A DNA stretch of 44,576 bases from Selaginella moellendorffii (lineage: Eukaryota > Plantae > Lycopodiophyta), in assembly GCF_000143415.4 (NCBI RefSeq), contig NW_003314313.1:601816-646391 (forward strand), written 5' to 3'. Shown here piece by piece: positions 1,100-43,200 of the stretch. The notes beneath the pieces are model-generated. The model was not told the DNA's origin, did no database searches, and saw only the letters and a list, made by a program, of their open reading frames with translations. Each line of letters opens with the position of its first letter. The first letter of the stretch is position 1. Both the position numbers and the translations under genes were made by a program.

Positions 1100-1111
1100 T
1101 TCGAGAGAGAT

Positions 1112-1200: not shown

Positions 1201-1445
1201 AAATTACCCCAAACATAATCTTGACTCGAGGATTGTTGCGAGACCGTCAGAAGGTAAGGTATGGTTTTTATTTTTTATAGAGGTCGCGACAAGTTTCCTG
1301 ACTTTTTGTGCCATGCCAGCTATTTACCCGTACAAAAGGCTCTTACTTAGAAACTTCTAAGGTGCCTTAACGAATATTCACCGGCTCGCTGGCAGAGAAC
1401 TGTGCCTTCTATTTTCTGGGTTTCTCTTTTGTGCGAGTAGCAGTC

Positions 1446-9901: not shown

Positions 9902-9904
9902 ATT

Positions 9905-9917
9905 TGGTATCGGAGCC
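9905..9917 (+). promoter_or_regulatory. Primer-binding site (initiator tRNA-Met type) of element A
   Basis: TGGTATCGGAGCC 3 nt after the 5' LTR end; one mismatch to the common plant TGGTATCAGAGC PBS. Confidence 0.88.
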
Positions 9918-23596: not shown

Positions 23597-24309
<713 letters not shown>

Positions 24310-24330
24310 AACACGGACGGTTTTCAAGAT

Positions 24331-25011
24331 ATGTACTGTTTTCGATTCATCATCTCGTCTCGAAACCCGTCTAAGGCCGGGGACGTGAGTGAGATCGAGG
24401 AAGATGGAACTGATTCTGAGGAACTGTCGTCCGGATGGAGGTTCCTAGCACGAGTTCTTGGCATCGGCCGATTTTTTCCCATTCGAAAGGAGTTGAAGAA
24501 GAAGATAACAAAGATACACAAAGGATTATATACGACTGTAGCTGACAAGGTAAGGGAAGGAGTTTCTGTTTTCAGTTTTCAGTTTTAAGCCATGATGCGT
24601 GTCTTTCAGGAACAAGTTCTGTTCGAGCAGAGGGAATTTATAAATTTTTGGGAGCAAAACCTACGCTACACAGCGCCAGACGCAGTCCCGAGAGCAGCAG
24701 CAGCGCCTAAACCGCCAGCGGCTGAGAGACGGAGCCACCCTGATTTTAGCAAGTTTTTCAAGATCAGGCTCAAGTTTCCTTCAGTGCCAGTGCGTCCAGC
24801 GTTCCGACTTGTGAAGAGCTTCATAATGTGGTGGTGGCCGAGACAAACTAAGAAGGAGCCAACGGATGATGCTGCTGTTGCTCCTGATGCTGCCGCCAGC
24901 TTTGGAACGCCGTTGCCTCCAAATCTACTGAGTGAGACTTGGGAAGCCTTCAAACTCAAGCTCGGCTTAGTCGTGGTGCTGCTGGTGATCTCGCTCTTGG
25001 TCCTCAGATAA
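24331..25011 (+). CDS. Putative chimeric or 5'-truncated gene of unknown function (exons 24331-24549, 24610-25011; 206 aa; C-terminal hydrophobic anchor)
   Basis: Two ORFs joined in frame by a 60-bp GT-AG intron (AAG|gtaagg...tttcag|GAA); ends LGLVVVLLVISLLVLR*. The first ~9 codons are GST 3'UTR sequence. Confidence 0.5.
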
Positions 25012-25558
25012 CGCACGCACACCTCTCTAGAGCCGAGGTATGGTTTAACACCTCTCATTTGTTCGCTTCGCTGTATAAAATATAGATGTCTGACACTCGA
25101 GTCTTTGTCCCGTGATCTTTTACGTTTTATCTTTTCTGCTTGCAGCAGAGACAGAGACACTAATGCCTCACTCCGAGACAAGAGTCGTATCAGAGGACCA
25201 AATTACACCTACGGATTGTTTTAAGCTGTCACCAGGAAGGTACTTGAACCGCAAGTTAATTTCTCACACTTCTTTTCCCTTCTGTAGGAGATAACGCAAG
25301 AATCTACCGCAAACATAATCTTGACTCGAGGATTGGCGCGAGACCGTCAGAAGGGATGGTGTTTATAAAGGTCACGACGAGTTTTCTGATCTTTTGTGGC
25401 AGGCACGCTGGAGTCCCGTACAAAAGCCTCTTAACTTAGAGACTTCTCAGGTGCCTTAACGAATATCCACCGGCTCGCTGGCATATATCTTCAGAGAACT
25501 GGTACGTTGTGCCTTGTATTTTCTGAGTTTCTCTTTTGAGTAGAAGCAAGTAGAAGAC

Positions 25559-26297
25559 ATGTCGAAAGACAGTGTGAAGCTCTTGAACTTCTGGCCGAGT
25601 ATGTTTGGCTTGAGAGTCCGCTATGCGCTGGATCTGAAAGGGGTGTCCTACGATTACCAGGAGGAGAGTTTGTCCAACAAGAGCAAGGAGCTTCTCGAGG
25701 CAAATCCAATCTATACGAAGATTCCGGTTCTCATCCACAACGGCAAGCCTATCTGCGAGTCTCTTGTCATCATCGACTACATTGACAGTGTGTGGCCCGG
25801 TTCTCACAAGCTCCTCCCGGAAGATCCATACGAAAAGGCTGTGGCTCGCTTCTGGGCAGACTTTGGTGACAGAAAGGTAAACTTGTCGCTTCTTCCGGGT
25901 TGATCAAAACCAGATTTTTCCTTACCAACAGCTCTTTGACGCCGGGAGCCGACTCAGACGAGCTATGGGGGAGGAGCACAAGAAAGCCGGCGAGGACTTC
26001 AAGTGGGCTCTGATGAAAATCGATGAAGCTCTCGGCACCATCGCTCCAGGCAAGCCTTTCTTTGGTGGCGACGCTATGAACTTTGCAGATGTTGCTCTGG
26101 CTCCATTCATCTGCTGGTTCAAAGGCTACCAGAAAGTGGGAGGATTCGTGCTTCCAGGCCCGGAAGAATGGCCCAATCTCTACAAGTGGGTGGACGCTGT
26201 AAATTCCGTGGACGCGATCAAAAAATCCACTCCAAGCCCAGACAAGGTTGCTGAATTCGCTGAGGTTCTCAGGAAGCGAGTTCTCGGGGCTGCCTAA
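25559..26297 (+). CDS. GSTU: Tau-class glutathione S-transferase, copy 3 (exons 25559-25876, 25932-26297; 227 aa)
   Basis: Same motifs as copy 1; 55-bp intron 25877-25931; intact frame. Confidence 0.96.
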
Positions 26298-27311
26298 AAC
26301 ACGGACGGTTTTCAAGATATGTACTGTTTTCGATTCATCATTTCGATGCGTAAACAATAAAAAGTATTTCAAATAAACAACGTCTCTGACATTTTCTAGA
26401 AATCCAGACGGTCCTTCGGGGTTCTTGCTTCAGAAATTTCGTCGAACGGCAATTTTTTACCACCGTCTCTGTGTGTGTGTGTGTGTGTTAGGATTAGCCT
26501 TTTTATTAAAATTTTATCCTTTAAATTCTCCTTATATGTTTATGGAAGCTTCTGTTTAGAAATATGTTTTACTAATTTACATATAACAACTATAAACTAA
26601 ACGTATAGAAATAGTAATGGGAAGCTAACACTTTTTTACTATATGATTAAACAAACCTTCTCCAGAAATCTTTTATTCATTGCTGAATGTTCTTTTAAAG
26701 ATTAATTCTTGCCTAAATTATAACATTTCATTATTTTGTATTTCTTTGTCAATATAAACTTTTTATTACCTCAAATATGCATACATCTATATATGGCAAA
26801 GCCTTTTGTGTATAACAAATACTTACCCTGTTTTCATATTTATTAGTTTAAACTTTTACTACCTAACAATCCTAGTTTTATATATTTAACAAACTAGCTT
26901 AAGTCAAGGTCATTTTTATAAAGATATATATTAAAGTTATATCTTATAAGTTTTTTATTTTCTTATATAAAGATTACGTTAATTTTATAGGGATTGAAAA
27001 AACATTAAGAATTGCCACTTTTGAGGAGCTCTACCTCTGAAATGAATATTTTTTATGGTGTATGTGTTTTAATTAATATTTAACTTTAATTATTACTTTT
27101 TAAAATTAATTGTGTTGAGAGTTATTATTTTTTAAAAATATTTCTCAAGCTGTAAGCTTTTGAATAAATACACTTTCACCATCTAATGCTTTAGACTGTA
27201 TATTTCATGCTCCAATATTTATATTCTATGTTTTTGCCATCTAATCTCATTTCAAATTTTTCTATTCTTTGCCAAAGTATATTTGGAGGAAAATGTATAA
27301 ATAGGAAAAAA

Positions 27312-27322
27312 TACATATATAC

Positions 27323-27359
<37 letters not shown>

Positions 27360-27366
27360 CATATAC

Positions 27367-27417
<51 letters not shown>

Positions 27418-27418
27418 G

Positions 27419-27465
<47 letters not shown>

Positions 27466-27486
27466 TATACATACATATATATACAT

Positions 27487-27583
<97 letters not shown>

Positions 27584-27652
27584 TATACATATATATATAC
27601 ATATACATATACATATACATATATATATATACACATATATATAAATATATAC

Positions 27653-27683
<31 letters not shown>

Positions 27684-27704
27684 CACATATATATATATAC
27701 ACAC

Positions 27705-27766
<62 letters not shown>
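27312..27766. repeat. Compound (TA)n/(ATATAC)n microsatellite, ~455 bp
   Basis: Direct reading; source of the YI/YT/CI-repeat pseudo-ORFs. Confidence 0.97.
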
Positions 27767-27772
<6 letters not shown>

Positions 27773-29208
27773 GGCTAATAATTCAATACTTAAGTTTCTA
27801 AATTAGCTTGGAGTTTATATTTACAAAAATACTTATAAAGAAATTAAATACCTTTACATTTAAGGGTAAGTTATCTTTGGTGGTAGTTGGGTTTGAAGTA
27901 ACTTGGAGCGGTGTTTAATTTTAATTGCTGCCATTAATTAATATTTAGATCCAAAAACCATTAAAAGTTTCTATTATTTAATATTATCACTTTGCCATTA
28001 ATTTTTTCAAACTAGAAAGAGCAAAAAAAAAACGTTGAAGCAAAATTATTACAATAAAAGTTACATTTTGGATTTTGATTCAATTATTACTAAATTGTTT
28101 TACTTATATGAAGATAATAGAAGAAAAATCAATGGTTTTCAACTCAAGTTTTTATTATTACTTCCACTCAAAGTTCTTGAAGCAATTTATAAATTGATTG
28201 TGGAACTTTGAACTGTTAAACTCCTTATCTCTCCATAAAAAAATAGAAAACCTTGAGAAGATTATATAAAAATGAAGAGTAAAACTATGTTAAGTGCGAA
28301 AAATTGGAATTTCTTTTGAAAAGAACAATAGAAGCACGTTTTTGAACAAAACTAGAAAGTGACAGAAAAAAAATACATCAAATTTGAAAAGTTTTATTTA
28401 CTTAATGGATTATGCTATAATCATTGTAGTCAATCTCACGGTGGGTCTCTTTCTTTTCTCTATACTCTACTAGGAGATTCCTCAAAAATGCAATCCAACA
28501 TTGATAAATACATCTCAAAGATAGTAAGATTAAAACTATCAAAGAGTGAGAAAGAACAAGAAGAATAGATTGATAAAACAAAGATAGAAAGGGAAACATA
28601 TGCTTAAGTAATTTTTATCATTTTTGTTACTCTAGTGTATAATTTTTTGATTAAAATAAAAATTTCTATAAATTGTATATTACTATGAAAATTTAAACCT
28701 TCAATTCTGGTTAATACTGGCCAGCATCCTAATTAATTCTTTCTTAAGGTTTCCAGGCAAATCTCTAGAATTCGATCTTGTTAAAGTCTTTTGATGTCAG
28801 CAAAATGATGATTTGCTGAAGCCTGGTAATCACATTCTGCTATGGCAGTGTCTTGGGGGGAGTTTATGCTTATCCAATAAACTATCACTCCATTGCCATT
28901 TTGCTCCATCACATGGAATCTTAAAGAGATGGATGCTGCAAATGAAGACCAAAGAGACCAGAGTGAACTAAATTATGGAAAGCTGGGTTTTAATTATAAA
29001 CACTTCATATATATTGCTCCCGTCACCATTTTGCTCCATTGGTCCATTGACTTATTATGGTGAGCAAATTAGAACTTTTCTGATCTTTTGGCACGCACGC
29101 TTCTATATGGCATCAGTTAATTGGCGGAATTCGTTTCGGATGGACAATTTTCTATTTTAACCAGACAAGAAATCTCTAGAGCCTTTCTAATGTGCCTCAA
29201 CGAATATC

Positions 29209-29246
<38 letters not shown>

Positions 29247-29258
29247 TTCGAGAGAGAT

Positions 29259-29347
29259 GTCTTGTGTTTTCTGAGTTTCTCTTTGGAGTAGAAGCAAGTA
29301 GTAGCCATGTCGAAAGGGAGTGTCAAGGTCTTGAGCTTCTGGTCGAG
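29259..29347 (+). pseudogene. Second copy of the 5' GST relic (ATG 29307, MSKGSVKVLSFWSR)
   Basis: Duplicate of 1112-1200. Confidence 0.8.
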
Positions 29348-29404
29348 AAATTACCCCAAACATAATCTTGACTCGAGGATTGTTGCGAGACCGTCAGAAA
29401 GTAA

Positions 29405-30341
<937 letters not shown>

Positions 30342-31018
30342 AACACGGACGGTTTTCAAGATATGTACTGTTTTCGATTCATCATTTCGATGCGTAAACA
30401 ATAAAAAGTATTTCAAATAAACAACGTCTCTGACTAGAAATCCAGACGGTCCTTCGGGGTTCTTGCTTCAGAAATTTCGTCGAACGGCAATTTTTTACTA
30501 CCGTCTGTGTGTTACGATTAGCCTTTTTATTAAAATTTTATCCTTTAAATTCTCCTTATATGTTTATGGAACCTTCTGTTTAGAAATATGGTTTACTAAC
30601 TAAGAACATATAACAACTATAAACTAAAAGTATAGAAATAGTAATGGGAAGCTAACACTTTTTTACTATATGATTAAACAAACCTTCTCCAGAAATCTTT
30701 TATTCATTGCTGAATGTTCTTTTAAAGATTAATTCTTGCCTAAATTATAACATTTCATTATTTTGTATTTCTTTGTCAATATAAACTTTTTATTACCTCA
30801 AATATGCGTACATCTATATATGGCAAAGCCTTTTGTGTATAACAAATACTTACCCCATTGCTATTGTTTTCATATTTATTAGTTTAAACTTTTACTACTT
30901 AACAATCCTAGTTTTATATATTTAACAAACTAGCTTAAGTCAAGTTCATTTTTATAAAGATATATATTAAAGATATATGTTATAATTTTTTTTATTTTCT
31001 TACATAAAGATTATTTTA

Positions 31019-31222
31019 TGCCTAAAACATGGACGGTTTTCAAGATGGGTACTGTTTTCGATTCATCATCTCGATGTGTAAACAGTACAAAGTACTTCAA
31101 ATAAAGAACGTCTCTGGGTCCTTTGTGGTTTTTGCTCTAGAAATTTCGTCGAACAGCAATTTTTTACTACCGTCTATCACATCAACACTTGCACTCTCTC
31201 TTTCTCTCTCTCTCTCTCTCTC
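31019..31222 (+). pseudogene. Orphan GST stop codon plus 3'UTR (relic of a further deleted copy), ending in a (CT)n tract
   Basis: tGCCTAAaacatggacggttttcaagat...cgattcatcatctcgatg matches the GST ...GCC TAA and 3'UTR, with no GST coding sequence upstream. Confidence 0.85.
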
Positions 31223-32006
31223 ATATGGTGTGTAATTTGTAAAAGCGGTTTACAATTAGTGCCCATGTGGCAGCTGTCTATTGGTTTAGCTTTAAATGTA
31301 CATCCCATTGCAATGGATGCCCAATGGATGCTGATGGGTGGATGAATATGGCATGCTAGGTGGATGAATATGGCATGCAATTTGTAAAAAGGTGGATTTC
31401 ACTCACACCACGTGTATGCCTGCTATTGGTCCATGTGAACTATGAGTGTGAAAAAAACACAAGCATAGAATATTTTACAAATATCCAATCCTTATGCCCC
31501 AGATGGGGCATCATGCCCATAGCAATAACCCATGCTATGTATGGAATGGAGCCATTCATGGCCCATAGACCCATTCATCCCATGCATTCTAGCAAGTTAT
31601 GAATTGCATGCAAACCAAATGGACAATCAACCAAATTGCATACCATACTACTTTATCTAGAGCACTATGTTCTCACATCTTGCTCTTGGCAAAAGAACTG
31701 AATTATCCTTTTTTAGCACACTTCTTTTAACATAGTGTTCATAGCAAGCATAAGTGAACTCCATCTAGCTCCATTGCAAAGCCATGGATATATACTGTTT
31801 TGAGTCATGTCTCTAATGCAATCCATTGAGTTTATCTTTCATTGCCATTGATTTCCATTGTATCTCTCTCAACACTTTAGTTTTGTACTATGATGCTTAG
31901 AAGATTTGGATATGACTCAAAAGTAAGTTGAAGTCTAATCAATTTGATGAATTGGTGGAGCTCATACTTCAATTGTGTACTACATAAAGATGCATAGTGT
32001 TGATGT

Positions 32007-32268
32007 TTGGACCTGGAGTTCTCTCAACAAAAGCATGTTGAAGGAGATTTGAGAATGTAGAAGTTGCAATTGCATGTAGTAACATTCAGGATAACAATAA
32101 ACACTTTCAACATTTTCTAATTATAATTGTTTCAAATTGGACTTGGAGTTCTCTCAAGAGGAGCATGCTAAAGGAGATTTGAGAATATGGAAGTTGCAAT
32201 TGCATGTAGTAACATTCAGGATAACAATAGACACTTTCAACATTTTCCAATCATAACCGTTTAAAATT
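32007..32268. repeat. Tandem duplication, 2 x ~130 bp
   Basis: The ttggaYYtggagttctctcaa... unit starts at 32007 and 32137; copies differ mostly by transitions. Confidence 0.92.
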
Positions 32269-32296
32269 TTGAAATTTGTAAAAAGGGTTTCCAAGC

Positions 32297-32710
32297 ATGA
32301 GGCAAAACTATCCAATGTATGTTGTGCACTACGGCCAAAGAACTGAAGTTTTCAGGGATTGGAAGCTCATGCTCACTTTAGTAAGAGTAGATTTATGATA
32401 GTTTCCTATATACTCTAACCCTTTTACAATGTTTGAGATTTCTGGATTTCCTTTTGGCATAGCAAATTGGAGAGGAATTTATGACTTCTTTGAAGCATAA
32501 CAATGGATCCAATAGGGGACAGAACCAAGGATTCTATATGATGCCTCCTCCTCTCAAGGCTCGACAATCCCTCCGACAAGGCAGCCCAAAACTACTTCTA
32601 ATGTTGTGCCAATCACCGAGGGCAAAGGTCCTGTTGAAGAAAGCGATAGTGAGGGATATGTTATTGTTGGAGATGTAAGCAAGGACAAGTTCACAGACCT
32701 AGAGTGATTT
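32297..32710 (+). pseudogene. Decayed small gene with an RNase H1 N-terminal / caulimovirus viroplasmin (Cauli_VI-like) domain
   Basis: MYVVHYGQRTEVFRDWKLMLTL|ISGFPFGIANWRGIYDFFEA*QW after removing a 57-bp intron (32381-32437, gtaaga...ttgag). Fits YxVxxGxxxxVFxxW-x6-[VI]xGFP...EAxxW spacing; two in-frame stops resemble C>T mutations. 3' end uncertain. Confidence 0.55.
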
Positions 32711-33015
32711 TGGTTCTACCATAAAACAGGTTGAGAGTTCCTCAAGCGAAGATGGGCATCATGTAGCACCGAAGCTCAATAGTTTTGACCCAAATCCTAA
32801 ATTGGGAGCTGCTTTGGAAGCTATAGTGATTACCCTTGGTGAGGCAAGCATAAGCTGCAAGTGCTTATAATGGGCATTTGTGGAATATTTTGAATATTCT
32901 TACCTTTAACTTTGCCAATGAACTAGAAAGAGTCTCTTTCAAAGTGTGAAATATATTTCAAGATAATTATCTATTTTTATTGTGAAAGTGTCTATATTAT
33001 AGTAGTTCCACAACA

Positions 33016-36000
33016 TCAGCCCAATCCATACAAGCTCTCTGGATTTTGGAATGCCCAATGGATCTTGTGTTTGGTCCACTTCATTAACGGGTATGTTAAA
33101 GGGAAGAAAACTTGTATGCATGTGGAGAACCTAGGAAATTGAGTAGATGATGTACCCTGTCTCTCAACTTGGATCCAAATAGGCTCTCCTAGTCGGAACT
33201 CTGGAGAATCAACCGCAAAGTGATGGAACTTGGATAACTCTTTCGGGCTCATATCTATAAAATGTTCAAACATACAAGAGTTTTAGTTGTTTGTGAAAGT
33301 AAATAGCTACCTTGAATGATGTCCATAATCTAGCTGCGGAAGTTCTTTTCAAAGTCTTGATCAAAGATCAAGCAGTTGATGAACTCCGCAGGAGGAATGA
33401 TCGTCCTTACCCGGAAGACCTGTAACAAAGCATCTGTCCCAATGAGTGAAAGCCTACCTAGCAATGCTGGACTCTTGTAAGGCCCCTAACGAGCTTCCAT
33501 ATGCATTGAGTGTTGGAAGCCATCTCAAAGTAAGTCTCCCACTACGTTTGGCTCGATGAATAGGTAACACCAGACCACCGCAGCCACGCATGCCTCCATA
33601 GCTTACTCATAACCTTCACCAAGTTCGGTGAGTCTGACTTAAGCACTACATTGTAGTCGGTAATTGCAGGGTTCTTTAGGATGGAATCCACAAACTTGCG
33701 CCAATCGCCCTCCTCCTTTAGGCTTGATGCACCTCGCAATTGGTTGAGTGCATTCCAAATATGTGGCATGCATGCTTTGAGGTCCATCTTATATAGTCCT
33801 TCTTGGGCAAGTTGTCGGTCATTCTTGTCTGGAACCTCTCTAGCTGCAATTGCCAATGTTGCAATTGTACACCTACAAAATACCTGTGCATTACATTTGA
33901 ACACTTGGAATAACAACCATCCCACAAAGACAGCCTGTGCATATAGAAATGAGGAGCATATAAAACTTGTGCTTTAAACTTAACTTACCACATCCCACTC
34001 TTCTTGTCGCAACGTCCTAAAATGCATTGGCAACCTAAGATGCCAATACGTGGCTCCTTCCCTAAGCACAAACAATCCACGCGTCACACGTCTGTAACAC
34101 AAAGTTACTCTAGTGAGCAAAGTGAAAATTAAACTTACCGATTTTGGAATCTAGCAAACAACCTCTCTAATGGCTTTTGCATATGGCCCACCTGCATCTA
34201 TTAAGGCTTCCTCCTACACCGAAGCTCCTCCAATCTCAGACGCATAGACCACTTTGTAATTTGGTGTGTGGAAATTAGTATTGAAGGCGAATTGGAAACA
34301 ACTAAATTCATTGTTTGGTGCAATCTAGAAAGACAAGTGAGGGAACTCCAATTTATAGGCAATCCATTGCTTATTAGAATGCGAGATGGTCTCAAATGTG
34401 TACGAACAAGTCTGTATGGCTGAAGCATGGCCTTCTCGATGCAAAAACAAGAGAACTTACAATATAGTGTTTCAACAGTGTCAAATAGTTCTCTCAATTG
34501 TTGTGCAGCTGCCCAATTCCTACGTAGGTCCCTGCACAAAACAATAAGATGGTACTAAGTGGTAAGAAATAGATATACGTACCTCTTCTCAATGAACCAT
34601 GCTATTGTGGACTCAACAATTGAAGGAGGCACATTGATACTTACTTTAACAAGGAGTTGTTGGATTGTGTTGTCACAAAACACATCCTCGTATTGTGCTT
34701 TTGAAAGGCCAAGCTTAAGGAGAACACTCTCAATCCTGCCAATGAGGAATGGCTTGGCTGAAAAGCACGCACCGAAGAAATATTTCACCACCAGCCCAAT
34801 GAAACTCAAGATGTCTAGCAACAGCGTCTAGCATCTCCTCGTCACTTGTGCTCTCCATGCTAAAGCAACCAAGAAACTTGTGTTTCAGCCACTGCACTTA
34901 TGAGAGAACTTCAACATCCCTCTGTGCCCTCATCTCAAAGGTTATAGTGGCATTTTGTAAGGCAGAAACCTCCTCATACTGCAGCATAATGAAGTTGGCA
35001 CTATCCTGAGTGGTTAACTAAATAACTTCATTAAATGTATTGGTGGCATCAATCCATCGTTGTTGATGCTCCAATAATCTACATGCAAACATTAGTTCAA
35101 TTTTGAATGGCACAATTTTTAATTATCTTACTCTACTGTAGAAAAGTTGTCAAGTAACTCTATAAGAGTAAGCGGAGTGGAGCTACTTCCCTCTAGAAAG
35201 GGGGGTGGAGGCACATCATGGTCTTCAAGGCCTCCGCTATCACTATCATACACTACCATTAACCTATCTGCACTCAGAAATTAGAAAATGAAGAAAATAT
35301 TTATTTATGTTAATGCTTCTTACCAGCCGCATGGCCTGGAGCCACTATCTCTGGTGACAAGGATGTCTCCGGAGATCTTTGGTGTGATTCATCCCCATCA
35401 TCACCTTGTTCTTTGACTCTGGTGATGTCCATATTGTTTTGTGTGGGGAGAGTTTCTTCCGGTAATGGAAGAATGTCCTCTTCATCCATAAAGTCTTCTT
35501 CTTCATTATTCTCGTCTTGATTTGGTTCCTGTGTGGCTGGCTTTGGAAGAAATGGCTCTATCACCAAGGGATCATCATTTGCAATCAAGGTATTTGTAGC
35601 AACTACAACTGCAAAGACCACAACATATATTTGTGAGGAGGGAACTTAAATAAAAAATGACTTATGTTCACGAACATCCTTCTCCTCGAGTGTTCAGGTT
35701 TGCTTTTGATAACTTAGCCAATGTTTGTCGGTAAGATGCTCCATAACATTGTATAGGTATATTATTGTTGCTCAGTTGCCATTGGCCTTGTTTGCTATAG
35801 CTCCCCATGATGTTTGAGAAGGCCAGTAGCAAGGCTGGATAGAGTTGAGGCCAAATTTTGTAGACTCGGCATGGGCCTCACCACCATTGGACTGCCTTTC
35901 ACGTTGGACAAATGCTCTTGGGTTGGCTATGGATGAAGGTTGGATTCTTGAGGTTTGGAGTGATAGTAGAATCGCATGTTGGGCTGTGCTGGGTTGGAAA

Positions 36001-36305
36001 GGAATACTGGAGTATAAGCCACCCCATATGAGACACTCTGGGAGGTCCACTGCCAGCTTATCAAGTTCTATCACCTTCATAGATAGCTCTCTTTTCCACC
36101 CATAGAAGTCTACATGCCAAGTCTTCGGGATTGCAATCCACTTGGTGACAAGAACTGTGGTGAATGGCTGGGGGACCAGGGGTGTCGTAGACGACATCCC
36201 ACCAATGACTTTGGATCGACTACCACAACATCCACGACGACAACATAAGGATTGCTGATTGTTATCGGCATACATGTGCACTACAGCCACAAGCGGTGAG
36301 AAAGT
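33016..36305 (-). pseudogene. Multi-exon divergent HECT-domain E3 ubiquitin ligase pseudogene (5' end missing or interrupted)
   Basis: HECT landmarks in the correct order: EEALIDAGGPY (~34181-34213), GLFVLREGATYW, AVFVGWLL, DLKACMPHIWNALNQL, DLL*DGF, MSPKELSKFHHF, FPRFSTC (putative catalytic Cys codon 33120-33118), then YP...KIHWAF...YGLG*. Multiple ~50-bp GT-AG introns (e.g. ~35323-35268, ~35131-35080, ~34582-34532, ~34138-34092, ~33988-33935). Many stops and frameshifts. Confidence 0.75.
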
Positions 36306-36367
36306 CTAACACAGTGAAACGAAAATGAGTTAAACAAATCCAAAGAAAAAAAAATTGAAGAGTGCAT

Positions 36368-36734
36368 TTTCAAGACCCCCAACAAGATCAAGACTGGAAA
36401 ATGCAGAAGACAAAGAGAAAAGCTAGTGGAAATGAAGAAGAGCATTAGATTGGCGTTGATTCAGATTGTGGAGAAATGGAACAAGGCTAACCTATATATA
36501 CTATAGGTTGATGAAGCTCCACCACTCTTGGATCGAGGACGGCCTAAATATAGCTGAGGTCGAGGAGGCACCACATCATCATCAGGAATGTGGCTCGAGA
36601 CTCAGGAATCGTACGGGAAATCAAAGAGTCAAGAATAGGGAAGTGTCTCGAGAGTCAGGAATAGGGAAGTGTCTCGAGAGTTAGAAATGTCGGCAAGAGT
36701 CAGGAATGTGGCAAGAATTGGGGGATTCCTGACA
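36368..36734 (-). repeat. 3' LTR of element D (distal end approximate)
   Basis: Follows the PPT; contains a TATA-like tatatata and ~26-bp tandem repeats (gagtcaRgaatagggaagtgtctcga); distal terminus degenerate (ttttcaagacccc). Confidence 0.7.
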
Positions 36735-36745
36735 GCACCCCCTCC

Positions 36746-37267
36746 TCAAGAATGAGGACGTGAATGAGAACGAAGAGGAGGATGAGATGGGTGGCAAGGG
36801 ATGGGAGATGGAGAAAAAGAATGGGGATTGGGACGAGAAGGATAGCGGCGGTGGAAGTCTTGAACAAGGTCAAGATAATGAATTAGGTTGTCTGTAGGTT
36901 CCCAAGTGCGTTCCTCAGGTCCATAACCCTTCCAGTCGACCAGATAGTAGAGTTTAGACCGTGAGATCTTGGAATCAAGGATGTTTTGAACCTCGTACTC
37001 AGACCCATCCTCGAGGTGCACTGGTGGAGGCGGAGGAATAACCCAATTTGGAATAGGACTGGGAATATAAGGCTCAAGGAGAGAGGAGTGAAAAATGGGG
37101 TGAATTTTATATGAGGAGGGAAGTGCAAGGCGATAAGTGACAGGATTAATGATGGCCGTGATAAGGAAAGGACCGAGGCGTTTGAAATCGAGTTTGGGAC
37201 ATGGCCTAGTGGTGGAGATATTTCGTCTAAGGAGCCAGACTTTATCCCGATATTGTAAGAGGGACAA
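36746..37267 (-). pseudogene. Integrase C-terminus (GPF motif) and chromodomain of element D
   Basis: KLDFKRLGPF...YRLALP..KIHPIFHSSLLEPY; EYEVQNILDSK....LYYLVDWKGYGPEERTWEP..NL. Confidence 0.93.
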
Positions 37268-40200
37268 TCCTAATGATGGATATTGGCAAATGTTTTATGA
37301 GATTCCTGAGCATGATGGAGGTGGAAGGAGATGGAGTTGTGGATTTCCTGGAGGTTGGAGACAAATGCCTTAGAGCGGGGATTTGAACGAGAGGATTTGG
37401 ATGGAGAAGGAAGTGAGAGATTGAATTGGGGATTTTGGCCAGAGTTTGCAAAGAAGGGGGAAACTCGAAGAGAGGAGTGAACAGAGTTATTATAGGAGAA
37501 CTCAGCAAGGGGAAGGATATCGAACCAGTCATTGTGATGATAGTTGATGAAACACCTCAGGAATTGTTCCAACGTCTGAATTGTTCACTCGGACTGTCTA
37601 TCAGTTTGAGGATGATATGCTGAAGAGAGGTTGGCCTTCACTCCAAGCAACTGCAAGAACAATTGCCAGAAATGAGAGATGAACTGAGGTCCCTGATCCG
37701 AAACCACATCTACAGGAATCCCATGAAGTCGGAAAATTTCCCTGAATACCAGTTTTGCCATGTCCTCGCCTGAAAACTCCTTGGTACACGGCAGGAAGTG
37801 CGCCATTTTTGTGAAGTGATCCACCACAACTAAAATGCTGTTGAAGCCTCTAGAACTCGGAAGATCACTCAAGAAATCCATGGATTCCCAAAGACTTGAA
37901 GGGACCGGGAGGGAATGAAGCAAACTTGAAGGAAGGTGGCGAGGTACCTTATTCCGGGTGCAAGTGTCACAAGAGGTAACAAAAGCTTTGATGTAGTCAT
38001 CCATGTGAGGCCACCAAAAGTCCCGTGCAACTAGCTCATAGGTTTTCGCAATGTCGAAGTGACTAGCAGTTGGGCTATCGTGGCACGCCATCAGGACCAA
38101 CCTTCGAGCATCACCTTCAGGAACATAAAGCTGCTCCCCACGGTACAACAAGCCATCTAAGAACTCAAACTCGTCAAATTGCCGGTAATCAGGAGTCACT
38201 GGGTGTCCAGCCTGAAGATGGGGGAAAATGTCGTTGGTGAGGTCATCAGATTGAAGATCGTTTTTGATCGCATCTATCAAGGAGGAGTCCTGAGGGGCCA
38301 GGGAAATGGCCATAACTTGAAGCCGATCAGGACCGAGGATAACCTGATCCTATTGATCGAAGGCAGGATTACCAAGCCTGAGACTGAGATAGGAGTGCCT
38401 TGAAAGAGCATCAGGAAGGCCTTGAAGCTTTCCAAGTCTGTACTTGATAACAAAGTCAAACCGACTTAGGAATTGTGCTCACCTTGCTTGACGACGGCTC
38501 AAAACTTGGGAAGTGGCAAAGTACTCGAGATTTTTGTGATCCGTTCAGACTGTTGTTTGATAGCCCGCCCCCTCCAAAAAACGACGCCACTCTCCAAAGG
38601 AATCCACGATGGCAAGGAACTCCTTGTTGTGGATTTCGTAATTGATCTCCGTAGACTAGAACTTCTGAGAATGGAAAGCGACCGGATGAAATTCCTGATC
38701 CGCTCCGAGTTGAGACAGCACAGCACCGATGGCAAAGTCGGAGGCGTCAGCCTCGATGAAGAAAGGCAACGTGGATCAAGACGGGAGTAGAACTAAAGGC
38801 CACCTTCGAAGGCCTGCTGGGCAACAGCAGACCAAGAGAAGGGAACATCATTGCGAGTGAGATGCGTGAGAGGAAGGATAATGTCAGAGTAGTGATCAAT
38901 GAATTTGTGGTAGAAGTTGGCGAAGCCAAGAAAAACCTGAACGTCTGACATTGATTGTGGAGGCTCCCATTCGAGAATAGTTTTGACTTTGGCAGGATCC
39001 ATCGTGATACCCTCAGGAGTGACAATGTACCCAAGGAACTCCACAGACTCCTGATCGAAGGAACATTTCTCAAGCTTCGCGTATAGGCCGTGTTCCTGCA
39101 GCTTCGCCAGCACCTTGTGCACATGCTCATCATGCTCCTCCTGAGTTTTTGAGTAGATGAGGATGTCATCGAGGTAGACGATCACCATCTGATCAAGAAA
39201 CTCCCGAAAGATGTCATTTGCCATGTGTTGGAAAACTGCTGGAGCATTTGTCAAGCCAAATGGCATGACAATGTTCTCAAAGTGGCCATGGCGGGTTCGA
39301 AACGCAATCTTCCATTCATCGCTAGGCCGGATCCGTATCAGGTTGTATGCTCCACGGAGGTTGATCTTGGTGAAGAAACATGCACCGCCAAGGCTCCAGC
39401 CGGGGACTGCGAATGCTGAATGTACCCCGAGGCAAGGTTCTCATCCATATACTCTTTGAGGGCCTTAAGCTCGAACGGGGATAACCCATAGATAAGCCCC
39501 CACGGAGGTGACGCTCCTTCTTGTAAATCAATGGGACAGTTATAAGGTCAATGAACAGGCAATACACTAGCTTTTTTCTTGTCAAACACATCCCCAAAAT
39601 CATGATACTTCTCAGGAAGACTGACAGGAGAAACATGCAAAGCAAAAAGGAAAATAAGTTCTTCATGAAGGAGTTCTTTCATAGTGATTATGGAGATAAG
39701 AAGAGGCGTACGACTAAATGGAATGATGAGACAAGGATACTGTTCAGTGTAAGATGGAAGAGAGGAAAAATAAAAGAGTGAAAACTTCGTAAAGTCAGGA
39801 ACAAAACCCCGATTTGCGTTTAGGGAACTTTTCTTGATTCGGACTCAATGAACAGCAAGGGAAGCCGTGGGAGATGGTGATGTGGGAGAGACGAGCTGTA
39901 ATTCCTTCCAACAGATTTGAGGCTGGTGTAGTTGGAACCAAGGAAGGCCGAGCACCACAGAGGAGGACTTGCTGTTAATGATGTTGAAGGCGATATCGGT
40001 GATGGTGGACCCGATGTGTACTCAAACAGGCAACGTTTCCCTAAGTCCAGAAGATGGAGACACAAAATGCCCGCCGATGCCTTTAACCCTCAGATCCCGT
40101 ATAGTAGGAGAAAGAGGAATATGATGTCAGGTAGCAAAGTCTGTGTCCATGAAGCAGGAAGTTGCACTCGAGTCCAGTAGCGCCAGAGCCTTGAGTCCTG

Positions 40201-40274
40201 ATTGTTTGGTGAAAGAAAGGAGACATGGGATGTGGAAGTTGCAGGAATTGGTGGTGGCTTTGAAGGGGGGGTGG

Positions 40275-43200
40275 GGGGGGTTATGAAGGGTTCCAAATGT
40301 ATAATAAGGATAGTGGTTGGAATGTATGTCCGACCATTTAAGACATTAGTTTGGCTCTTGCTGGGCTATGTTGCTCTTTGTTTTGCATCTGGCTTAAGTC
40401 TAAGCCCAAGCTTTACACTACTCTAGTCGGTGGAGTACCCTCCTTCTCGCATTAGGCCACTAGGATGCCAAAATCATGCCAAATACCGTATGACACTATT
40501 TTGCATGTAAGTGCTAGATATGGGGAGTTGATGCTAATGGGATTGTACCGGACCCTCGTTCTATAGTGCAACAAGCTTGAAGTTCAACTTTAAATTCAAG
40601 TGCGCTACATTTGATATCAAAGGAATTGTCATAGTGATTCTTATCCAACTTTTGTTGGATTTTCTAACTTAAGTTGCATACATAAAGACTTTACTAGTAG
40701 ATCTGAAGTGACCTGTGTAGGATTAATTAGATTGCACCATTCAGTAAGAACATTGTATGTATGTTCAGCTACTGATAGAGGCATGCATGCAACTAGTGGA
40801 ATGATGAAAAGGAATTGTGTTAATGATGCTGAAACTTCTAAATGGGTGAATCAAGAGGAAGAAACTCCTACTAGAGATGCTGCAAAAGAGGTTAAGGTTG
40901 AGTCAGAAGAGGAAGAGATGCTGCGACATTACAACATATGGCTCAGGAAGTTAAGATTGAGAATTTGCGAAGGGAAATTTGCAAATTGAAGAAGGAGAAC
41001 AAGAAGAAGAAAAAAGAATCTAAGCCAGCTAAATCAACTAAACCTAAGCAATTGGACTTCTTTTCAAGTTTTGAGGACGATGAAGTTTTGCAACTGCCCC
41101 CAATTGCATGAGTTTCAAAGTTCAAGCCTCCAAAACCACTCAATTTCAAAGGCATGTAGAACTATTAGGTTTTGGAAGACTGGGTCTACGATATGGAAAA
41201 CTATTTCATAACAACAGATATAGACAAAAGTTGCATGCATACAATCCTTTCTCACCGATTATGCCAAAACTTGGTGGCGCCAGCTGTGTGCTAAAAAAGG
41301 TAGGATAGAAGTTGGACCAAGATGCAATCTTGTATCCATAAGGAATACTTGTTGGACAATCTTGGTTCGGGACTTTGAGCGGAATTGCAACAATTAAAGC
41401 AGTGAAGGGACCTTATACATTATGTTAATGCATTTGCTTAGAAGCACATTATAATTGCAAATATGAGTGACAAAGATGCTCAGAATTATTTCTTGGAAGG
41501 TTTAAGTTCACTTTCTTGCAATAAGATTTTGAAGTTTAAGCTGAAAACATACCTAGAGTGTATAGAGACAGCATAACAAGTTGCTTTTAGTTACTCACTC
41601 ATGGAATAGTATCAACAGTCGTATATTAGTAACTTAGACAAGAATAAGAACTCTAGAAATAAACAAGGTAATTGGAAATAGAGGGTGGAAGGAAAGTTTT
41701 GCCCTAGAGGCTCACAAGCAACAATTAACAAAGGTGGTGGTTGGTGACCACCAGCAGCTTCTTTTGGTCCTAGTCCCTCTGTTCTTCCTCCTGGTGGGTA
41801 CAAGCAACAGGAACTTGTGAAACCTACTCCTAGTGGAATGGGTAATATGAGTCATTGCTTGCATTGTGGAAAGACAGGACATAGGTCCTTGGAATGTCCC
41901 AACAAACATAAGACAAGGTCTGTTGTTAATGTCATGAGGGAAGATGGTGGTGGTGAAGTTGAAGGGGTTGATGAGTTGGTTAATGTAAACTATGAGGAAG
42001 AAGAGGTGAGTTACTTTCGTTACTTTTCTCAAGCTTTTTTCGTAATCAATGCAAACAATGATTCATTGATGTATTTGATAGGCTTTGTTTGTGGACACTA
42101 AATCTGAGTGATGATTAATACAGAAGCTATGCACATCATGATATCTGAAGATTTAGTTAAGTTGTTCACTTAAATAGTCTTATTGGAATATCACTCACAA
42201 ATTTTTTAGCTACTTGCCCATCTTCTGCAAACTGGAAGTGTATGGGTGACATTTGTTTAGCATTCAATCTTTGGCTTTGGTCTTTATTTAAATACTTGTT
42301 AGCACTTACTTTATATGCTTACTTTGCATGAATCAAGTTTCAATCATAGAAAGAGTGGACTTGGTAGTGCTGAAGATTCCAGATTTTTAGATGGTGTTTG
42401 GTATGGATTTCTTCAACAAATATATAAAAAGGATTTATGGTGCTGGACAAAGTCATATCACATTAAGGTCAAAAGGACATTTTGATGTGTCGTTTTAGTT
42501 GCAAAAGCGCTCCTTAAAGGATTGCGATGCTAAATTCCTGATTGTGAGAGCCGCTTAAAAAGTAGTTAAGAAGGGATGTTAAACATTTTGGGTTCAAGTG
42601 ATGGAAGCTAAAGGTGATGGTGACTCAATTCGAATTGGTGACAGGGTTGATCTTGTACCAAAGGAGATATTAAAGTTGTTAGCATGGAATCAAGTTATCT
42701 TTTCAAAGGATTTGCCACTAGAGCTACCTCCTAGCTATGAGGTTGATCATCAAATTAAGGTTATTCCGAGTACTAAACCACCTATAAAGGCTTCATATTG
42801 TTTAAATATCAAAGAGATGACTGAACTCAAAAAACAACTCATAGAGGTTCTTAACAAAGGTTATATCCAACCAAGCAAGTAATCTTATTTATGGAAAGTG
42901 TCTAAATTTTCTCATTTGGCATATCTATGAAATGTAAAGATTGTTCTAAACACAATGGTGTTCATCCTATGTCCAAATTCACAATCTAGGGATATTTCAT
43001 ATTTAATAGGTTTCAAACTTGTCCTAAAGATTAACTTTTGGTATTAAAGGTGGTTAAGGGTGAAAGCCCAAAGTGTGTGTTCTTCAAGAGGGGGGGTATA
43101 ATAAAGATAGTGGGATGTATAGTAAGGATAGTGGGTAGGTTAGATATGGTTGACCAACCTGAGGTATAGTTTAACTTTGACTTGCATGCCCGTCCTTATT

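What the first reader, a model, noticed from the sequence alone, without database searches (positions are those of the whole stretch)
31231..36305. Cryptic two-gene cassette: divergent HECT E3 ligase converging on a Cauli_VI/RNase H1-N domain gene, possibly transposon cargo
Seen: manual splicing gives a minus-strand HECT-like gene and a plus-strand small RNase H1 N-terminal-like domain gene, tail to tail within a few hundred bp and similarly decayed (C>T-type stops, frameshifts). The block starts abruptly after a GST 3'UTR relic, with an imperfect hairpin (31233-31258), a 20-bp direct repeat (31337-31356 / 31359-31378) and a repeated aatttgtaaaa motif. Established: HECT domains ubiquitinate via a C-lobe Cys; the RNase H1 N-terminal domain binds RNA:DNA hybrids and dsRNA. 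Inference: this pairing is not a standard plant housekeeping arrangement. It may be the accessory module of an uncharacterised mobile element, e.g. anti-silencing by degrading host factors plus nucleic-acid binding. No transposase is visible; it could lie beyond the LTR insertions, outside the window.
Basis: partly seen in the sequence, partly recalled or inferred. Interest (0 to 1): 0.8.

Follow-up and report, generated by a model that had tools for sequence, protein, structure and literature searches.

The report
Dead GingerRoot transposon half, HECT gene
This stretch is the non-transposase half of a long-dead, many-copy cut-and-paste transposon (IS3EU/GingerRoot type) of the spikemoss Selaginella moellendorffii. 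Besides the transposase, the family always carries a very divergent ubiquitin-ligase-like (HECT) gene and a small RNase H1 N-terminal-like gene, a cargo I found in no searchable paper.

Summary
Window 31369-36367 is the right-hand 5.0 kb of an about 8.5-kb IS3EU/GingerRoot DNA transposon of Selaginella moellendorffii (scaffold GL377617.1), lying in reverse orientation.

It is collinear at 89-92% identity with five full-length copies on five other scaffolds. Those copies have TATGG..CCATA termini, 62-bp terminal inverted repeats (TIRs) and 5-bp target-site duplications. All share one gene order: integrase-type transposase, then a HECT-like gene, then a small convergent gene.

In the window:
- The HECT-like gene (35744-33016, minus strand) keeps the N-lobe IDAGGP motif and the C-lobe FSTC cysteine. 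It carries 9 in-frame stops and 2 frameshifts.
- The small gene (32297-32870, plus strand) has a Cauli_VI first half. It carries 2 stops and a 2-bp deletion.
- The transposase part is cut off by a Ty3/gypsy retrotransposon inserted at 36367/36368.

No RNA-seq reads cover the body. HECT identity rests on sub-threshold Pfam hits plus ESM Atlas matches; my own folds failed.

This scan already reported the same family on other DNA of this genome.

The parts
31019..31175 (.). Flank: relic of the repeat unit of the tandem GST gene cluster (not part of the transposon)
   Evidence: 79-94% identical to 30335-30506, 26291-26468, 24303-24357 and 2189-2361. RNA reads here come from paralogues at 90-95% identity.
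31194..31222 (.). (CT)n microsatellite directly abutting the first transposon terminus
   Evidence: Read directly from the sequence.
31224..31368 (+). Fragment A: about 150 bp of the transposase-side (left) terminus of another copy of the same family.
   Evidence: Aligns to L002 4237-4387 and L001 8215-8365, with 14- and 9-bp deletions. The junction with element B is bridged by a 405-bp contig of run X1, filed in 2024, that lacks the 22-bp duplication at 31337.
31369..31431 (+). Right terminal inverted repeat of element B (terminus TATGGCATGCAATTTGTAAAAAGGTGG)
   Evidence: Aligns to the right ends of L002-L005. The TIR is 62-63 bp at about 85% identity between the two ends in full copies.
31369..36367 (-). 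Element B: the right-hand 5.0 kb (reference positions 3142-8458 of 8458) of an IS3EU/GingerRoot transposon, in reverse orientation and truncated by a retrotransposon
   Evidence: Collinear BLASTN matches to L001 and L002, and a six-copy alignment with L001-L005, at 89-92% identity. Summed contig depth in DNA run X1 is 3,300-13,200 inside against 540-1,000 in the flank, with up to 21 distinct contigs at a single variant site.
32007..32268 (.). Two tandem copies of an approximately 131-bp subterminal repeat upstream of the small gene
   Evidence: Self-BLAST gives 89% identity. The repeat pair recurs in the other copies (ref 7227-7489).
32273..32283 (+). Internal copy of the TIR core motif AATTTGTAAAA, 14 nt (motif end to ATG) upstream of the small gene's ATG
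   Evidence: The motif occurs exactly three times per full element: both TIRs plus this site. The window has 3 against 0.085 expected.
32297..32380 (+). Small gene exon 1 (28 codons): first half of an RNase H1 N-terminal (Cauli_VI/HBD)-like domain
   Evidence: Pfam Cauli_VI profile positions 2-20: E 0.018 in the window, E 1.5e-5 and 25.6 bits in L002, E 0.01-0.03 in other copies. The ATG and open frame are intact here.
32381..32437 (+). 57-nt GT..AG intron of the small gene (my model)
   Evidence: Length and GT..AG ends are kept in 6 of 6 copies. HECT-gene introns in the annotated model are 36-57 nt. No RNA evidence.
32438..32870 (+). Small gene exon 2. It starts ISGFPFGIANWRGIYDFFEA, the putative second half of the domain, followed by a Ser/Pro/acidic tail. 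It is broken by TAA 32498-32500, TAG 32513-32515 and a 2-nt deletion near 32705.
   Evidence: The frame is open in L001 (135 codons) and carries only one shared 1-nt difference in L004. The public models P0014 and P0015 splice around the broken stretch. The second half of the domain gets no Pfam or PDB hit on its own.
33016..35744 (-). HECT-like gene (10 exons on the P0002 model); a pseudogene here with 9 in-frame stops and two frameshifts (2 nt at 34732, 1 nt at 33636)
   Evidence: TBLASTN of P0002, P0001 and P0005. Exon map and lesion list. Pfam HECT C-lobe hits. ESM Atlas: feature score 0.95 with 29 of 30 hits HECT, and TM 0.56-0.60 over 294-312 residues to HECT ligases.
33118..33120 (-). 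Codon of the putative catalytic cysteine (FPRFSTC, matching the HECT LPxAHTC position)
   Evidence: Alignment A4 with P0002 and P0011. It falls inside the Pfam HECT match to profile positions 219-300 of 306.
34184..34201 (-). N-lobe signature EEALIDAGGP (HECT 'EEGxDxGG' motif)
   Evidence: Translation of 34139-34324. The motif is nearly invariant in family alignment A3. Its likeness to the canonical HECT motif rests on my own knowledge.
35745..36367 (-). Upstream linker: homologue of the Ser/Thr/Pro-rich stretch between the transposase and the HECT-like part. Some public models read it as one protein with both.
   Evidence: P0005 residues 525-677 align to 35993-35406. P0005, P0011 and P0012 read through this stretch.
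36368..39266 (-). Ty3/gypsy chromovirus inserted into element B. It runs on towards the window end; its second LTR was not found in the window.
   Evidence: Family homology ends at 36367. At 36367 five X1 contigs continue with other sequence, and at 36370 eight contigs arrive from other flanks. Pfam finds Chromo and SH3_Tf2-1, rve and Integrase_H2C2, and RVT_1 on minus-strand ORFs.

Best explanation
Window 31369-36367 is the non-transposase half of a dead copy of an approximately 8.5-kb cut-and-paste DNA transposon of the IS3EU/GingerRoot superfamily in Selaginella moellendorffii.

Shown here:
- The copy landed, in reverse orientation, about 150 bp inside the left end of another copy of the same family. 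That other copy survives as fragment A (31224-31368).
- A Ty3/gypsy retrotransposon later split the copy at 36367/36368, so its transposase part lies outside the window.
- The family carries three gene-like parts in fixed order: an integrase-type (rve/rva_4) transposase; on the same strand a very divergent HECT-type ubiquitin-ligase-like gene; and, converging on it, a small gene whose first exon encodes half of an RNase H1 N-terminal (hybrid-binding) domain.
- In this copy both accessory genes are pseudogenes, decayed mainly by C>T/G>A changes, and no RNA reads cover them.

Inferred, not shown, for the once-active element:
- The transposase bound the TIR core AATTYGTAAAA. That motif also sits 14 nt (motif end to ATG) upstream of the small gene's start, which suggests coupled regulation.
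- The HECT protein used its retained C-lobe cysteine to ubiquitinate a protein target.
- The small protein bound RNA:DNA hybrid or double-stranded RNA.
- My preferred role, at about 35%, is counter-defence against host silencing. In that reading the ligase removes a host silencing or chromatin factor, and the small protein binds dsRNA or hybrid, much as the Cauli_VI-bearing P6 protein of caulimoviruses is said to do.
- The alternative, at about 25%, is help with transposition itself, such as ubiquitin-driven removal of the very stable integrase-type strand-transfer complex.
For: Identity as a transposon copy:
- Collinear 88-90% DNA matches to L001 and L002, and to five full copies of 8458-8762 bp on scaffolds GL377590, GL377572, GL377634, GL377587 and GL377609 with unrelated flanking genes.
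- Termini TATGG..CCATA, 62-bp TIRs and 5-bp flanking direct repeats.
- rve/rva_4 integrase-core hits in models that also hold the HECT part.
- Many divergent copies in DNA run X1, with a depth step at the terminus.
- The literature gives IS3EU termini as TAYGG..CCRTA (PMC12730594) and describes S. lepidophylla GingerRoot elements of 8.6-8.9 kb with TA..TA termini (PMC6839031).

HECT-like gene:
- Pfam C-lobe hits at E 2.2e-4, 3.7e-4 and 0.045.
- ESM Atlas feature score 0.95 with 29 of 30 hits HECT, and TM 0.56-0.60 over about 300 residues.
- IDAGGP and FSTC motifs retained.

Small gene:
- Cauli_VI at 25.6 bits, above the 21-bit cut-off, in L002 exon 1, with weaker hits in four other copies or models.
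- The top three Atlas feature hits are Cauli_VI proteins, at 0.82, which is a lead only.
- The 57-nt GT..AG intron is kept in 6 of 6 copies.

Death of this copy:
- Lesion lists, mutation spectrum, and zero RNA-seq depth on 31879-36400 in three runs.

Motif: exactly three sites in each of the four copies with both ends intact.
Against: - The HECT Pfam scores stay below the 23.9-bit gathering cut-off and cover only the C-lobe.
- Sequence and profile searches of the PDB found no HECT chain.
- Both of my AlphaFold models were unusable at pLDDT 39-40. The fold evidence therefore rests on the Atlas's own low-confidence model (pLDDT 0.53).
- Only the first half of the Cauli_VI domain is detected. The second half, across my inferred intron, gets no hit alone, and public gene models splice it out.
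- Flanking repeats are 5 bp, not the 6 bp reported for IS3EU/GingerRoot.
- TIRs are about 62 bp, not 100-150 bp.
- Variable sites among the six copies show no third-codon-position excess. There is thus no evidence that the HECT gene was ever under purifying selection.
- No relatives outside S. moellendorffii were found.
- The functional roles are pure inference.
- The nesting of B in A cannot be completed, because B's other end is outside the window.
Confidence: 0.85

Rival explanations
1. The HECT-like and small genes are host gene fragments picked up by one GingerRoot lineage ('Pack'-type capture, as described for S. lepidophylla GingerRoot). On this view they are passengers with no role for the element.
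For: - 22 of 77 intact GingerRoot elements in S. lepidophylla carry captured gene fragments with introns (PMC6839031).
- No codon-position signal of selection among the six copies.
- No RNA reads.
Against: - Reported captures are fragments of 84-1,654 bp at 79-98% identity to a parental gene, and usually come with loss of the transposase.
- Here a whole ten-exon gene and a whole small gene sit beside the transposase in five of five full-length copies.
- A search of 1.84 billion representative proteins with a 143-aa exon found only ten proteins. The seven among them that I traced to a source are S. moellendorffii models, so no close host parent appeared.
- The protein is too divergent from canonical HECT to be a recent capture.
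- An ancient capture at the origin of the family cannot be excluded, and would not conflict with a later role.
Confidence: 0.12
2. There is no separate HECT gene. The HECT-like region is the C-terminal part of one long transposase-linker-HECT fusion protein.
For: - Two public models (P0005 at 1200 aa, P0011 at 1299 aa) join an rve/rva_4 N-terminal part to the HECT-like part on one strand, through the Ser/Thr/Pro-rich linker.
- P0012 reads from the linker into the HECT-like part.
Against: - In L002, L004 and L005 the annotators called two separate genes.
- All models are computational, made on decayed copies with long 'introns' that skip lesions.
- No transcript evidence exists either way.
- The window itself cannot decide, because the transposase part is missing.
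Confidence: 0.25
3. The two domain assignments are chance or compositional matches, and the ORF relics encode neither a HECT ligase nor a hybrid-binding protein.
For: - All window hits are sub-threshold: HECT at E 0.045 and Cauli_VI at E 0.018.
- PDB sequence searches were blank.
- My AlphaFold models failed.
Against: - The same profile region is hit independently in several copies.
- One Cauli_VI hit passes the curated cut-off.
- The Atlas feature score of 0.95, with 29 of 30 neighbours HECT, is reached by about 1 in 100 shuffled proteins, and structure matches cover both lobes.
- The two HECT signature motifs sit in the right order and about the right distance apart.
Confidence: 0.05
4. Ordinary single-copy host pseudogenes lying beside a GST cluster, not a mobile element.
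For: The public annotation lists them as two hypothetical host genes, SELMODRAFT_421537 and 421536.
Against: - Five other copies with TIRs and flanking duplications lie on other scaffolds with unrelated neighbours.
- Hundreds of divergent contig pieces in a DNA run, with a depth step at the terminus.
Confidence: 0.01

Closest known systems
[quoted passage not shown] 2019, PMC6839031; Kojima 2023, PMC10045372)
   Same: - Integrase-like rve-type transposase in the family.
- TA..TA termini of the form TAYGG..CCRTA.
- Terminal inverted repeats.
- Element size of about 8.5 kb, against an 8.6-8.9 kb average in S. lepidophylla.
- Lycophyte host, many dead copies and little or no expression.
   Different: - Flanking duplications here are 5 bp, not 6 bp.
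- TIRs are about 62 bp, not 100-150 bp.
- The papers I could read describe only the transposase (DDE region) and captured gene fragments. None mentions a HECT or an RNase H1 N-terminal-domain gene (0 occurrences of HECT or ubiquitin).
Fungal IS3EU families carrying accessory TET/JBP dioxygenase and alpha-kinase genes (Kojima 2025, PMC12730594)
   Same: - Same superfamily and the same TAYGG..CCRTA ends.
- Fixed multi-gene layout, with an accessory gene on the transposase strand and another in the opposite orientation.
- The authors propose the accessory enzyme helps the element escape silencing.
   Different: - The cargo differs: HECT-like ligase plus hybrid-binding-like protein instead of TET/JBP plus alpha-kinase.
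- The host is a plant, not a fungus.
- No evidence here of transfer between transposon superfamilies.
Canonical eukaryotic HECT E3 ubiquitin ligases (Pfam PF00632)
   Same: - About 350-residue C-terminal domain with an N-lobe EExxDxGG-type motif and a C-lobe cysteine in an xPxxxTC context.
- Structure-level matches at TM 0.56-0.60 to the HACE1, HECTD3, NEDD4-like and HERC classes.
   Different: - Sequence is so divergent that Pfam stays below its cut-off and PDB sequence searches find nothing.
- No recognisable substrate-binding domain upstream; instead an acidic and Ser/Thr/Pro-rich N-terminal region.
- Encoded inside a transposon, in many decayed copies.
RNase H1 N-terminal hybrid-binding domain / caulimovirus P6 (Pfam PF01693, Cauli_VI)
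   Same: - The first exon matches profile positions 2-20, including the Y..G...G.F..W core.
- A plausible second half (GFPFG.ANWRGFYDFFEAQQW) follows at the right spacing if the 57-nt intron is removed.
   Different: - Only the first half is statistically detected.
- No RNase H catalytic domain follows.
- The rest of the roughly 165-aa protein is a low-complexity Ser/Pro/acidic tail.

Membership tests
IS3EU/GingerRoot DNA transposons | Termini TA..TA (TAYGG..CCRTA in described IS3EU families) | tested here: met
   TATGGCG..CGCCATA in L002-L005. Window termini are TATGGCATGC at 31369 and TATGGTGTGT at 31224. Literature form from PMC12730594 and PMC10045372.
IS3EU/GingerRoot DNA transposons | Terminal inverted repeats (over 30 bp in IS3EU; 100-150 bp in S. 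lepidophylla GingerRoot) | tested here: met
   62-63 bp at about 85% identity in L002-L004, up to about 90 bp in L005. This is shorter than the GingerRoot range but within the IS3EU description.
IS3EU/GingerRoot DNA transposons | 6-bp target-site duplication | tested here: not met
   With TA..TA ends, the flanking direct repeats are 5 bp: GCTCA, GAATG and TTTTT are perfect, and ACTAA/ACTAT matches 4 of 5. A 6-bp reading works for only 2 of 4 copies and needs asymmetric ends. Not testable for the window copy, which has only one end.
IS3EU/GingerRoot DNA transposons | Integrase-like DDE transposase (rve fold) without an HHCC zinc finger | tested here: inconclusive
   rve and rva_4 hits at E 2e-7 to 1.8e-13 in family models P0005 and P0011, and in the L004 gene. 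I did not map the DDE residues or check for absence of HHCC. The transposase part is absent from the window.
IS3EU/GingerRoot DNA transposons | Multi-copy, at unrelated genomic sites | tested here: met
   Six loci on six scaffolds. 1,885 contig pieces of 85-100% identity in run X1, with a depth step at the terminus.
HECT E3 ubiquitin ligases (PF00632) | Pfam HECT profile match above the gathering score | tested here: not met
   Best scores are 21.4 and 20.7 bits against a 23.9-bit cut-off, covering the C-lobe only (profile 213-301 of 306). The window piece scores 13.8 bits.
HECT E3 ubiquitin ligases (PF00632) | Bilobed HECT fold (N-lobe plus C-lobe) | tested here: inconclusive
   The ESM Atlas's own model (pLDDT 0.53) matches HECT ligases at TM 0.56-0.60 over 294-312 of 368 residues, and the feature search scores 0.95. 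My AlphaFold models were unusable at pLDDT 39-40.
HECT E3 ubiquitin ligases (PF00632) | Catalytic cysteine in the C-lobe about 30-35 residues from the C-terminus | tested here: met
   FPRFSTC is retained in P0002, P0011 and the window copy, 33-34 residues from the end and inside the Pfam-aligned C-lobe. Catalytic activity was not tested.
RNase H1 N-terminal domain (Cauli_VI, PF01693) | Pfam profile match above the gathering score | tested here: inconclusive
   L002 exon 1 scores 25.6 bits against 21, at E 1.5e-5, but over profile positions 2-20 of 44 only. The window, L001, P0014 and P0015 are sub-threshold at 12-16.5 bits.
RNase H1 N-terminal domain (Cauli_VI, PF01693) | Complete domain of about 44 residues, including the second half with its conserved aromatic and basic residues | not testable with these tools
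   The second half lies across an inferred 57-nt intron. Alone it gives no hit.

The most novel reading that the evidence does not exclude
The HECT-like ligase and the hybrid-binding-like protein may be ancestral, functional accessory genes of a lineage of IS3EU/GingerRoot transposons, possibly with the ligase fused to the transposase. On this reading the element used its own E3 ligase to destroy a host silencing or repair factor, or to clear its integrase-type transposase from the strand-transfer complex. That would be the first DNA transposon known to bring its own ubiquitin ligase. It would parallel plant viruses that hijack ubiquitination, and fungal IS3EU elements that carry TET/JBP.
Probability: 0.3. 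Interest if true: 0.8.

Novelty: new variant of a known kind. Interest (0 to 1): 0.5.

Why it matters
Cut-and-paste transposons are usually thought to need only a transposase. A family that always carries a ubiquitin-ligase-like gene and a nucleic-acid-binding-like gene suggests that some plant transposons manipulate host protein turnover, as viruses do.

That gives a concrete, testable candidate for a transposon-encoded counter-defence, or for disassembly of the transposition complex.

Practically, the public S. moellendorffii annotation lists these decayed transposon genes as host genes (for example SELMODRAFT_421537, 421536 and 407700). That inflates the count of 'HECT domain' proteins in this model lycophyte.

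This particular locus is only a dead, truncated copy. Its value is as one more witness of the family, and as an example of one copy landing inside another.

Tried and rejected
- AlphaFold2 on the HECT-like region (368 aa, 10-sequence alignment) and on the C-lobe alone (123 aa) gave pLDDT 39.3 and 39.9. The models were unusable, so I ran no fold search on them.
- phmmer of P0002 and a profile of alignment A3 against PDB sequences found no HECT chain; only chance hits appeared at E 0.2-0.9.
- The second half of the Cauli_VI-like domain alone (30 aa) against PDB and Pfam gave nothing meaningful.
- Testing whether HECT pairs with this transposase outside Selaginella led nowhere. A word-index search with the HECT region, with the small gene's exon 2 and with the transposase region returned only S. 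moellendorffii proteins. A metagenome scan found none. These blanks are weak, because of length limits, word limits and near-identical seeds. The earlier agents' claim of such pairing therefore stays untested here.
- The codon-position test on variable sites among six copies gave informative sites 51/43/42 and singletons 132/97/88 for positions 1/2/3. There is no sign of purifying selection, which is expected if the copies decayed neutrally after a burst.
- The Pfam DUF7502 hit (E 4.7e-4) on 35313-35645 lies on an acidic low-complexity stretch and is below its cut-off. I treated it as compositional.
- A circle-junction reading of the two adjacent termini is rejected. Both termini point the same way (tip then interior, tip then interior), not tip to tip.
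- Walking beyond the window gave only 1.2 kb more of scaffold (L006). It is still retrotransposon-like, with no transposase.
All searches were made exon by exon or with public gene models.

Full report
**What is in the sequence**

The window is plant DNA from Selaginella moellendorffii scaffold GL377617.1. Window position w corresponds to record position 601815+w.

Left of the finding lies a tandem cluster of tau-type GST genes, with GST_N at 29408-29944. The stretch 31019-31175 is a relic of that cluster's repeat unit. It is followed by a (CT)n run at 31194-31222.

**The two genes exist**

On the minus strand, a public 747-aa gene model from another locus (P0002, SELMODRAFT_407700) aligns collinearly from 35744 down to 33019.

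- Pfam HECT matches the C-lobe in the window piece 33019-33282 at E 0.045. In the fuller models P0002 and P0011 it scores E 2.2e-4 and 3.7e-4, that is 21.4 and 20.7 bits against a 23.9-bit cut-off.
- The ESM Atlas places residues 380-747 of P0002 among HECT clusters. The feature score is 0.95, and 29 of 30 neighbours are HECT.
- The Atlas's own low-confidence model matches HACE1, HECTD3, NEDD4-like and HERC-type ligases at TM 0.56-0.60 over 294-312 residues.
- The window copy keeps the N-lobe motif EEALIDAGGP (34184-34201) and the C-lobe FPRFSTC, with the cysteine codon at 33118-33120.
- My own AlphaFold runs failed at pLDDT 39-40, and PDB sequence searches were blank.

I therefore call the protein HECT-like, not a proven HECT ligase.

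On the plus strand, an ATG at 32297 opens a 28-codon exon.

- This exon hits Cauli_VI (the RNase H1 N-terminal domain, profile positions 2-20) at E 0.018 in the window.
- In copy L002 the same exon scores E 1.5e-5 at 25.6 bits, above the 21-bit cut-off.
- A 57-nt GT..AG intron (32381-32437), kept in all six copies, would join it to ISGFPFGIANWRGIYDFFEA. By eye, and from my own knowledge of the domain, this fits the second half at the right spacing.
- Alone, that half gives no hit.
The full domain is therefore untested.
- Public models P0014 and P0015 splice around that stretch.

The two stop codons are 145 bp apart, tail to tail.

**Both genes are dead in this copy**

- Against the P0002 exon map, the HECT-like gene has nine in-frame stops, all C>T or G>A changes. 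It also has a 2-nt deletion at 34732 and a 1-nt deletion at 33636.
- The small gene has TAA at 32498, TAG at 32513 and a 2-nt deletion near 32705.
- Of 169 substitutions private to the window copy, 142 are C>T or G>A, mostly outside CpG. CpG observed/expected is 0.34.
- Three RNA-seq runs of the species, about 1.4 Gb read from each at 85% minimum likeness, put no read on 31879-36400.

**It is a transposon**

A search of 1.84 billion representative proteins with a 143-aa exon found ten proteins. The seven among them that I traced to a source are S. moellendorffii models.

I fetched five of their loci, on five other scaffolds with unrelated neighbours such as PPR, P450, glycosyl hydrolase and amino-acid transporter genes.

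- Each holds an 8458-8762-bp element, 89-97% identical to the others.
- The termini are TATGGCG..CGCCATA, the TIRs are 62-63 bp, and the flanking direct repeats are 5 bp: GCTCA, GAATG, TTTTT and ACTAA/ACTAT.
- The gene order is always the same. An rve/rva_4 integrase-type transposase comes first, then a Ser/Thr/Pro-rich linker, then the HECT-like gene, with the small gene converging on it.
- The window matches reference positions 3142-8458, which is window 36367 back to 31369.
- In DNA run X1, summed contig depth rises from 540-1,000 in the flank to 3,300-13,200 inside the element. Up to 21 distinct contigs appear at one variant site, and 1,885 pieces were laid at 85-100% identity.

**Classification**

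The literature describes IS3EU/GingerRoot elements as having TA..TA termini, of the form TAYGG..CCRTA in fungal IS3EU. They have TIRs, usually 6-bp duplications and an integrase-like transposase. S. lepidophylla GingerRoot elements average 8.6-8.9 kb (PMC6839031, PMC10045372, PMC12730594).

The family here fits on termini, TIRs, size, host group and transposase type. It differs in showing 5-bp duplications and shorter TIRs.

**Boundaries in the window**

- At 31224 a terminus, TATGGTGTGTAATTTG, opens about 150 bp that match the transposase-side end of the family. The match is to L002 4237-4387, with two small deletions. I call this fragment A.
- At 31369 a second terminus, TATGGCATGCAATTTG, opens the right end of the copy that carries the two genes (element B).
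- Both termini point the same way. The simplest reading is that B inserted, in reverse orientation, 150 bp inside A. A circle junction would be tip to tip, and this is not.
A 405-bp contig of run X1, filed in 2024, bridges the junction without it.
- The hairpin at 31233-31258 lies in the TIR.
- The motif AATTYGTAAAA occurs exactly three times in each of the four copies with both ends intact: once in each TIR and once 14 nt (motif end to ATG) upstream of the small gene's ATG. The window has three sites against 0.085 expected.
- At the right, homology ends at 36367, not 36305. There a Ty3/gypsy chromovirus begins, with Chromo, rve and RVT_1 on the minus strand. X1 contigs of other copies diverge exactly at that point.
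- No transposase-part homology exists anywhere else in the window, nor in the 1.2 kb beyond it.

**How it likely worked**

Shown: the layout, the retained motifs, and the death of this copy.

Inferred: the transposase recognises the TIR core, which is also placed before the small gene. The HECT-like protein transfers ubiquitin through its C-lobe cysteine. The small protein binds RNA:DNA hybrid or dsRNA.

I favour counter-defence against host silencing at about 35%. Fungal IS3EU elements that carry TET/JBP are proposed to escape methylation-based silencing in an analogous way (PMC12730594). Help with transposition, such as ubiquitin-driven clearing of the integrase-type complex, gets about 25%. 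The remainder is unknown or no function.

Nothing here tests these roles. Variable sites among the six copies show no codon-position bias, as expected for neutral decay after a burst.

Whether HECT is a separate gene or the tail of a transposase fusion is open. Two public models fuse them, and three loci have them apart.

**Rivals**

- Pack-type capture of host fragments is known in GingerRoot. It fits poorly: whole genes sit beside the transposase in five of five full copies, no close host parent was found, and the divergence from canonical HECT is extreme.
- Chance domain hits are unlikely, given repeated independent hits and the Atlas result.
- Single-copy host pseudogenes are refuted.

**Novelty**

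The element kind is known. None of the papers I could search mentions a HECT or RNase H1 N-terminal-domain gene in IS3EU/GingerRoot or in any DNA transposon.

This scan has already reported the same family, with the same cargo, on at least eight other stretches of this genome. Those notes gave me the family name as a lead. I then tested that assignment myself.

Their further claim, that the HECT gene accompanies this transposase in other organisms, I could not test.

This locus adds a truncated, nested, retrotransposon-split copy.

Noticed in passing
window 1-2810, 23541-24357, 25301-26976, 28159-31013: Tandem or segmental duplicates of a tau-type GST gene unit, 86-96% identical. GST_N lies at 29408-29944. 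RNA-seq reads at 30894-31287 come from expressed paralogues at 90-95% identity, with a spliced or replaced 86-nt stretch at 31045-31132.
   Followed up: partly
window 3605-7849 vs 40274-44576: About 4.3 kb of direct repeat at 89-90% identity. The retrotransposon-like sequence that follows the chromovirus pol region near the window's end has a second copy downstream of the first GST unit. The 36368-36745 end of the chromovirus has no partner LTR in the window.
   Followed up: partly
window 8057-9386, 14012-15376 (94.7% direct) and 19935-20894 (inverted, about 85%): GC-rich (55-60%) blocks full of short internal repeats, open in all six frames (GLGLGL, SDSISD and RSRSRS peptides). They may be LTRs or a satellite-bearing repeat. 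They get no Pfam hit.
   Followed up: no
window 27191-27767: AT-rich compound microsatellite of (TA/CA)n type with GC about 18%, giving spurious 145-175-aa ORFs.
   Followed up: no
window 33330-35808 and 32297-32870: The public genome annotation carries gene models on both pseudogenes: SELMODRAFT_421537 (434 aa) and SELMODRAFT_421536 (127 aa). They are built by splicing around the stops. UniRef names the related model SELMODRAFT_407700 a 'HECT domain-containing protein'. These are transposon relics counted as host genes.
   Followed up: partly
L002 4237/12694, L003 5665/14156, L004 6579/15119, L005 5247/14008: Flanking direct repeats of this family are 5 bp when the ends are drawn as TA..TA. 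The literature gives 6 bp for IS3EU/GingerRoot.
   Followed up: partly
window 31337-31358: A 22-bp tandem duplication across the junction of the two transposon termini. It is present in the reference assembly but absent from a contig of DNA run X1, filed in 2024. It is either a polymorphism or an assembly slip.
   Followed up: partly
L003 6001-12236 (P0011) and L001 8001-15494 (P0005): Two public gene models fuse the integrase-type transposase and the HECT-like region into one protein of 1200-1299 aa, through a Ser/Thr/Pro-rich linker. Whether the living element made such a fusion is unknown.
   Followed up: no
L001 15448-15996 (minus strand) and L004 small-gene region: In my exon model the small gene has no stop or frameshift in L001, apart from a private 1-nt change near its 3' end. 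L004 shows none either. These are the least-decayed copies seen and would suit expression tests.
   Followed up: partly
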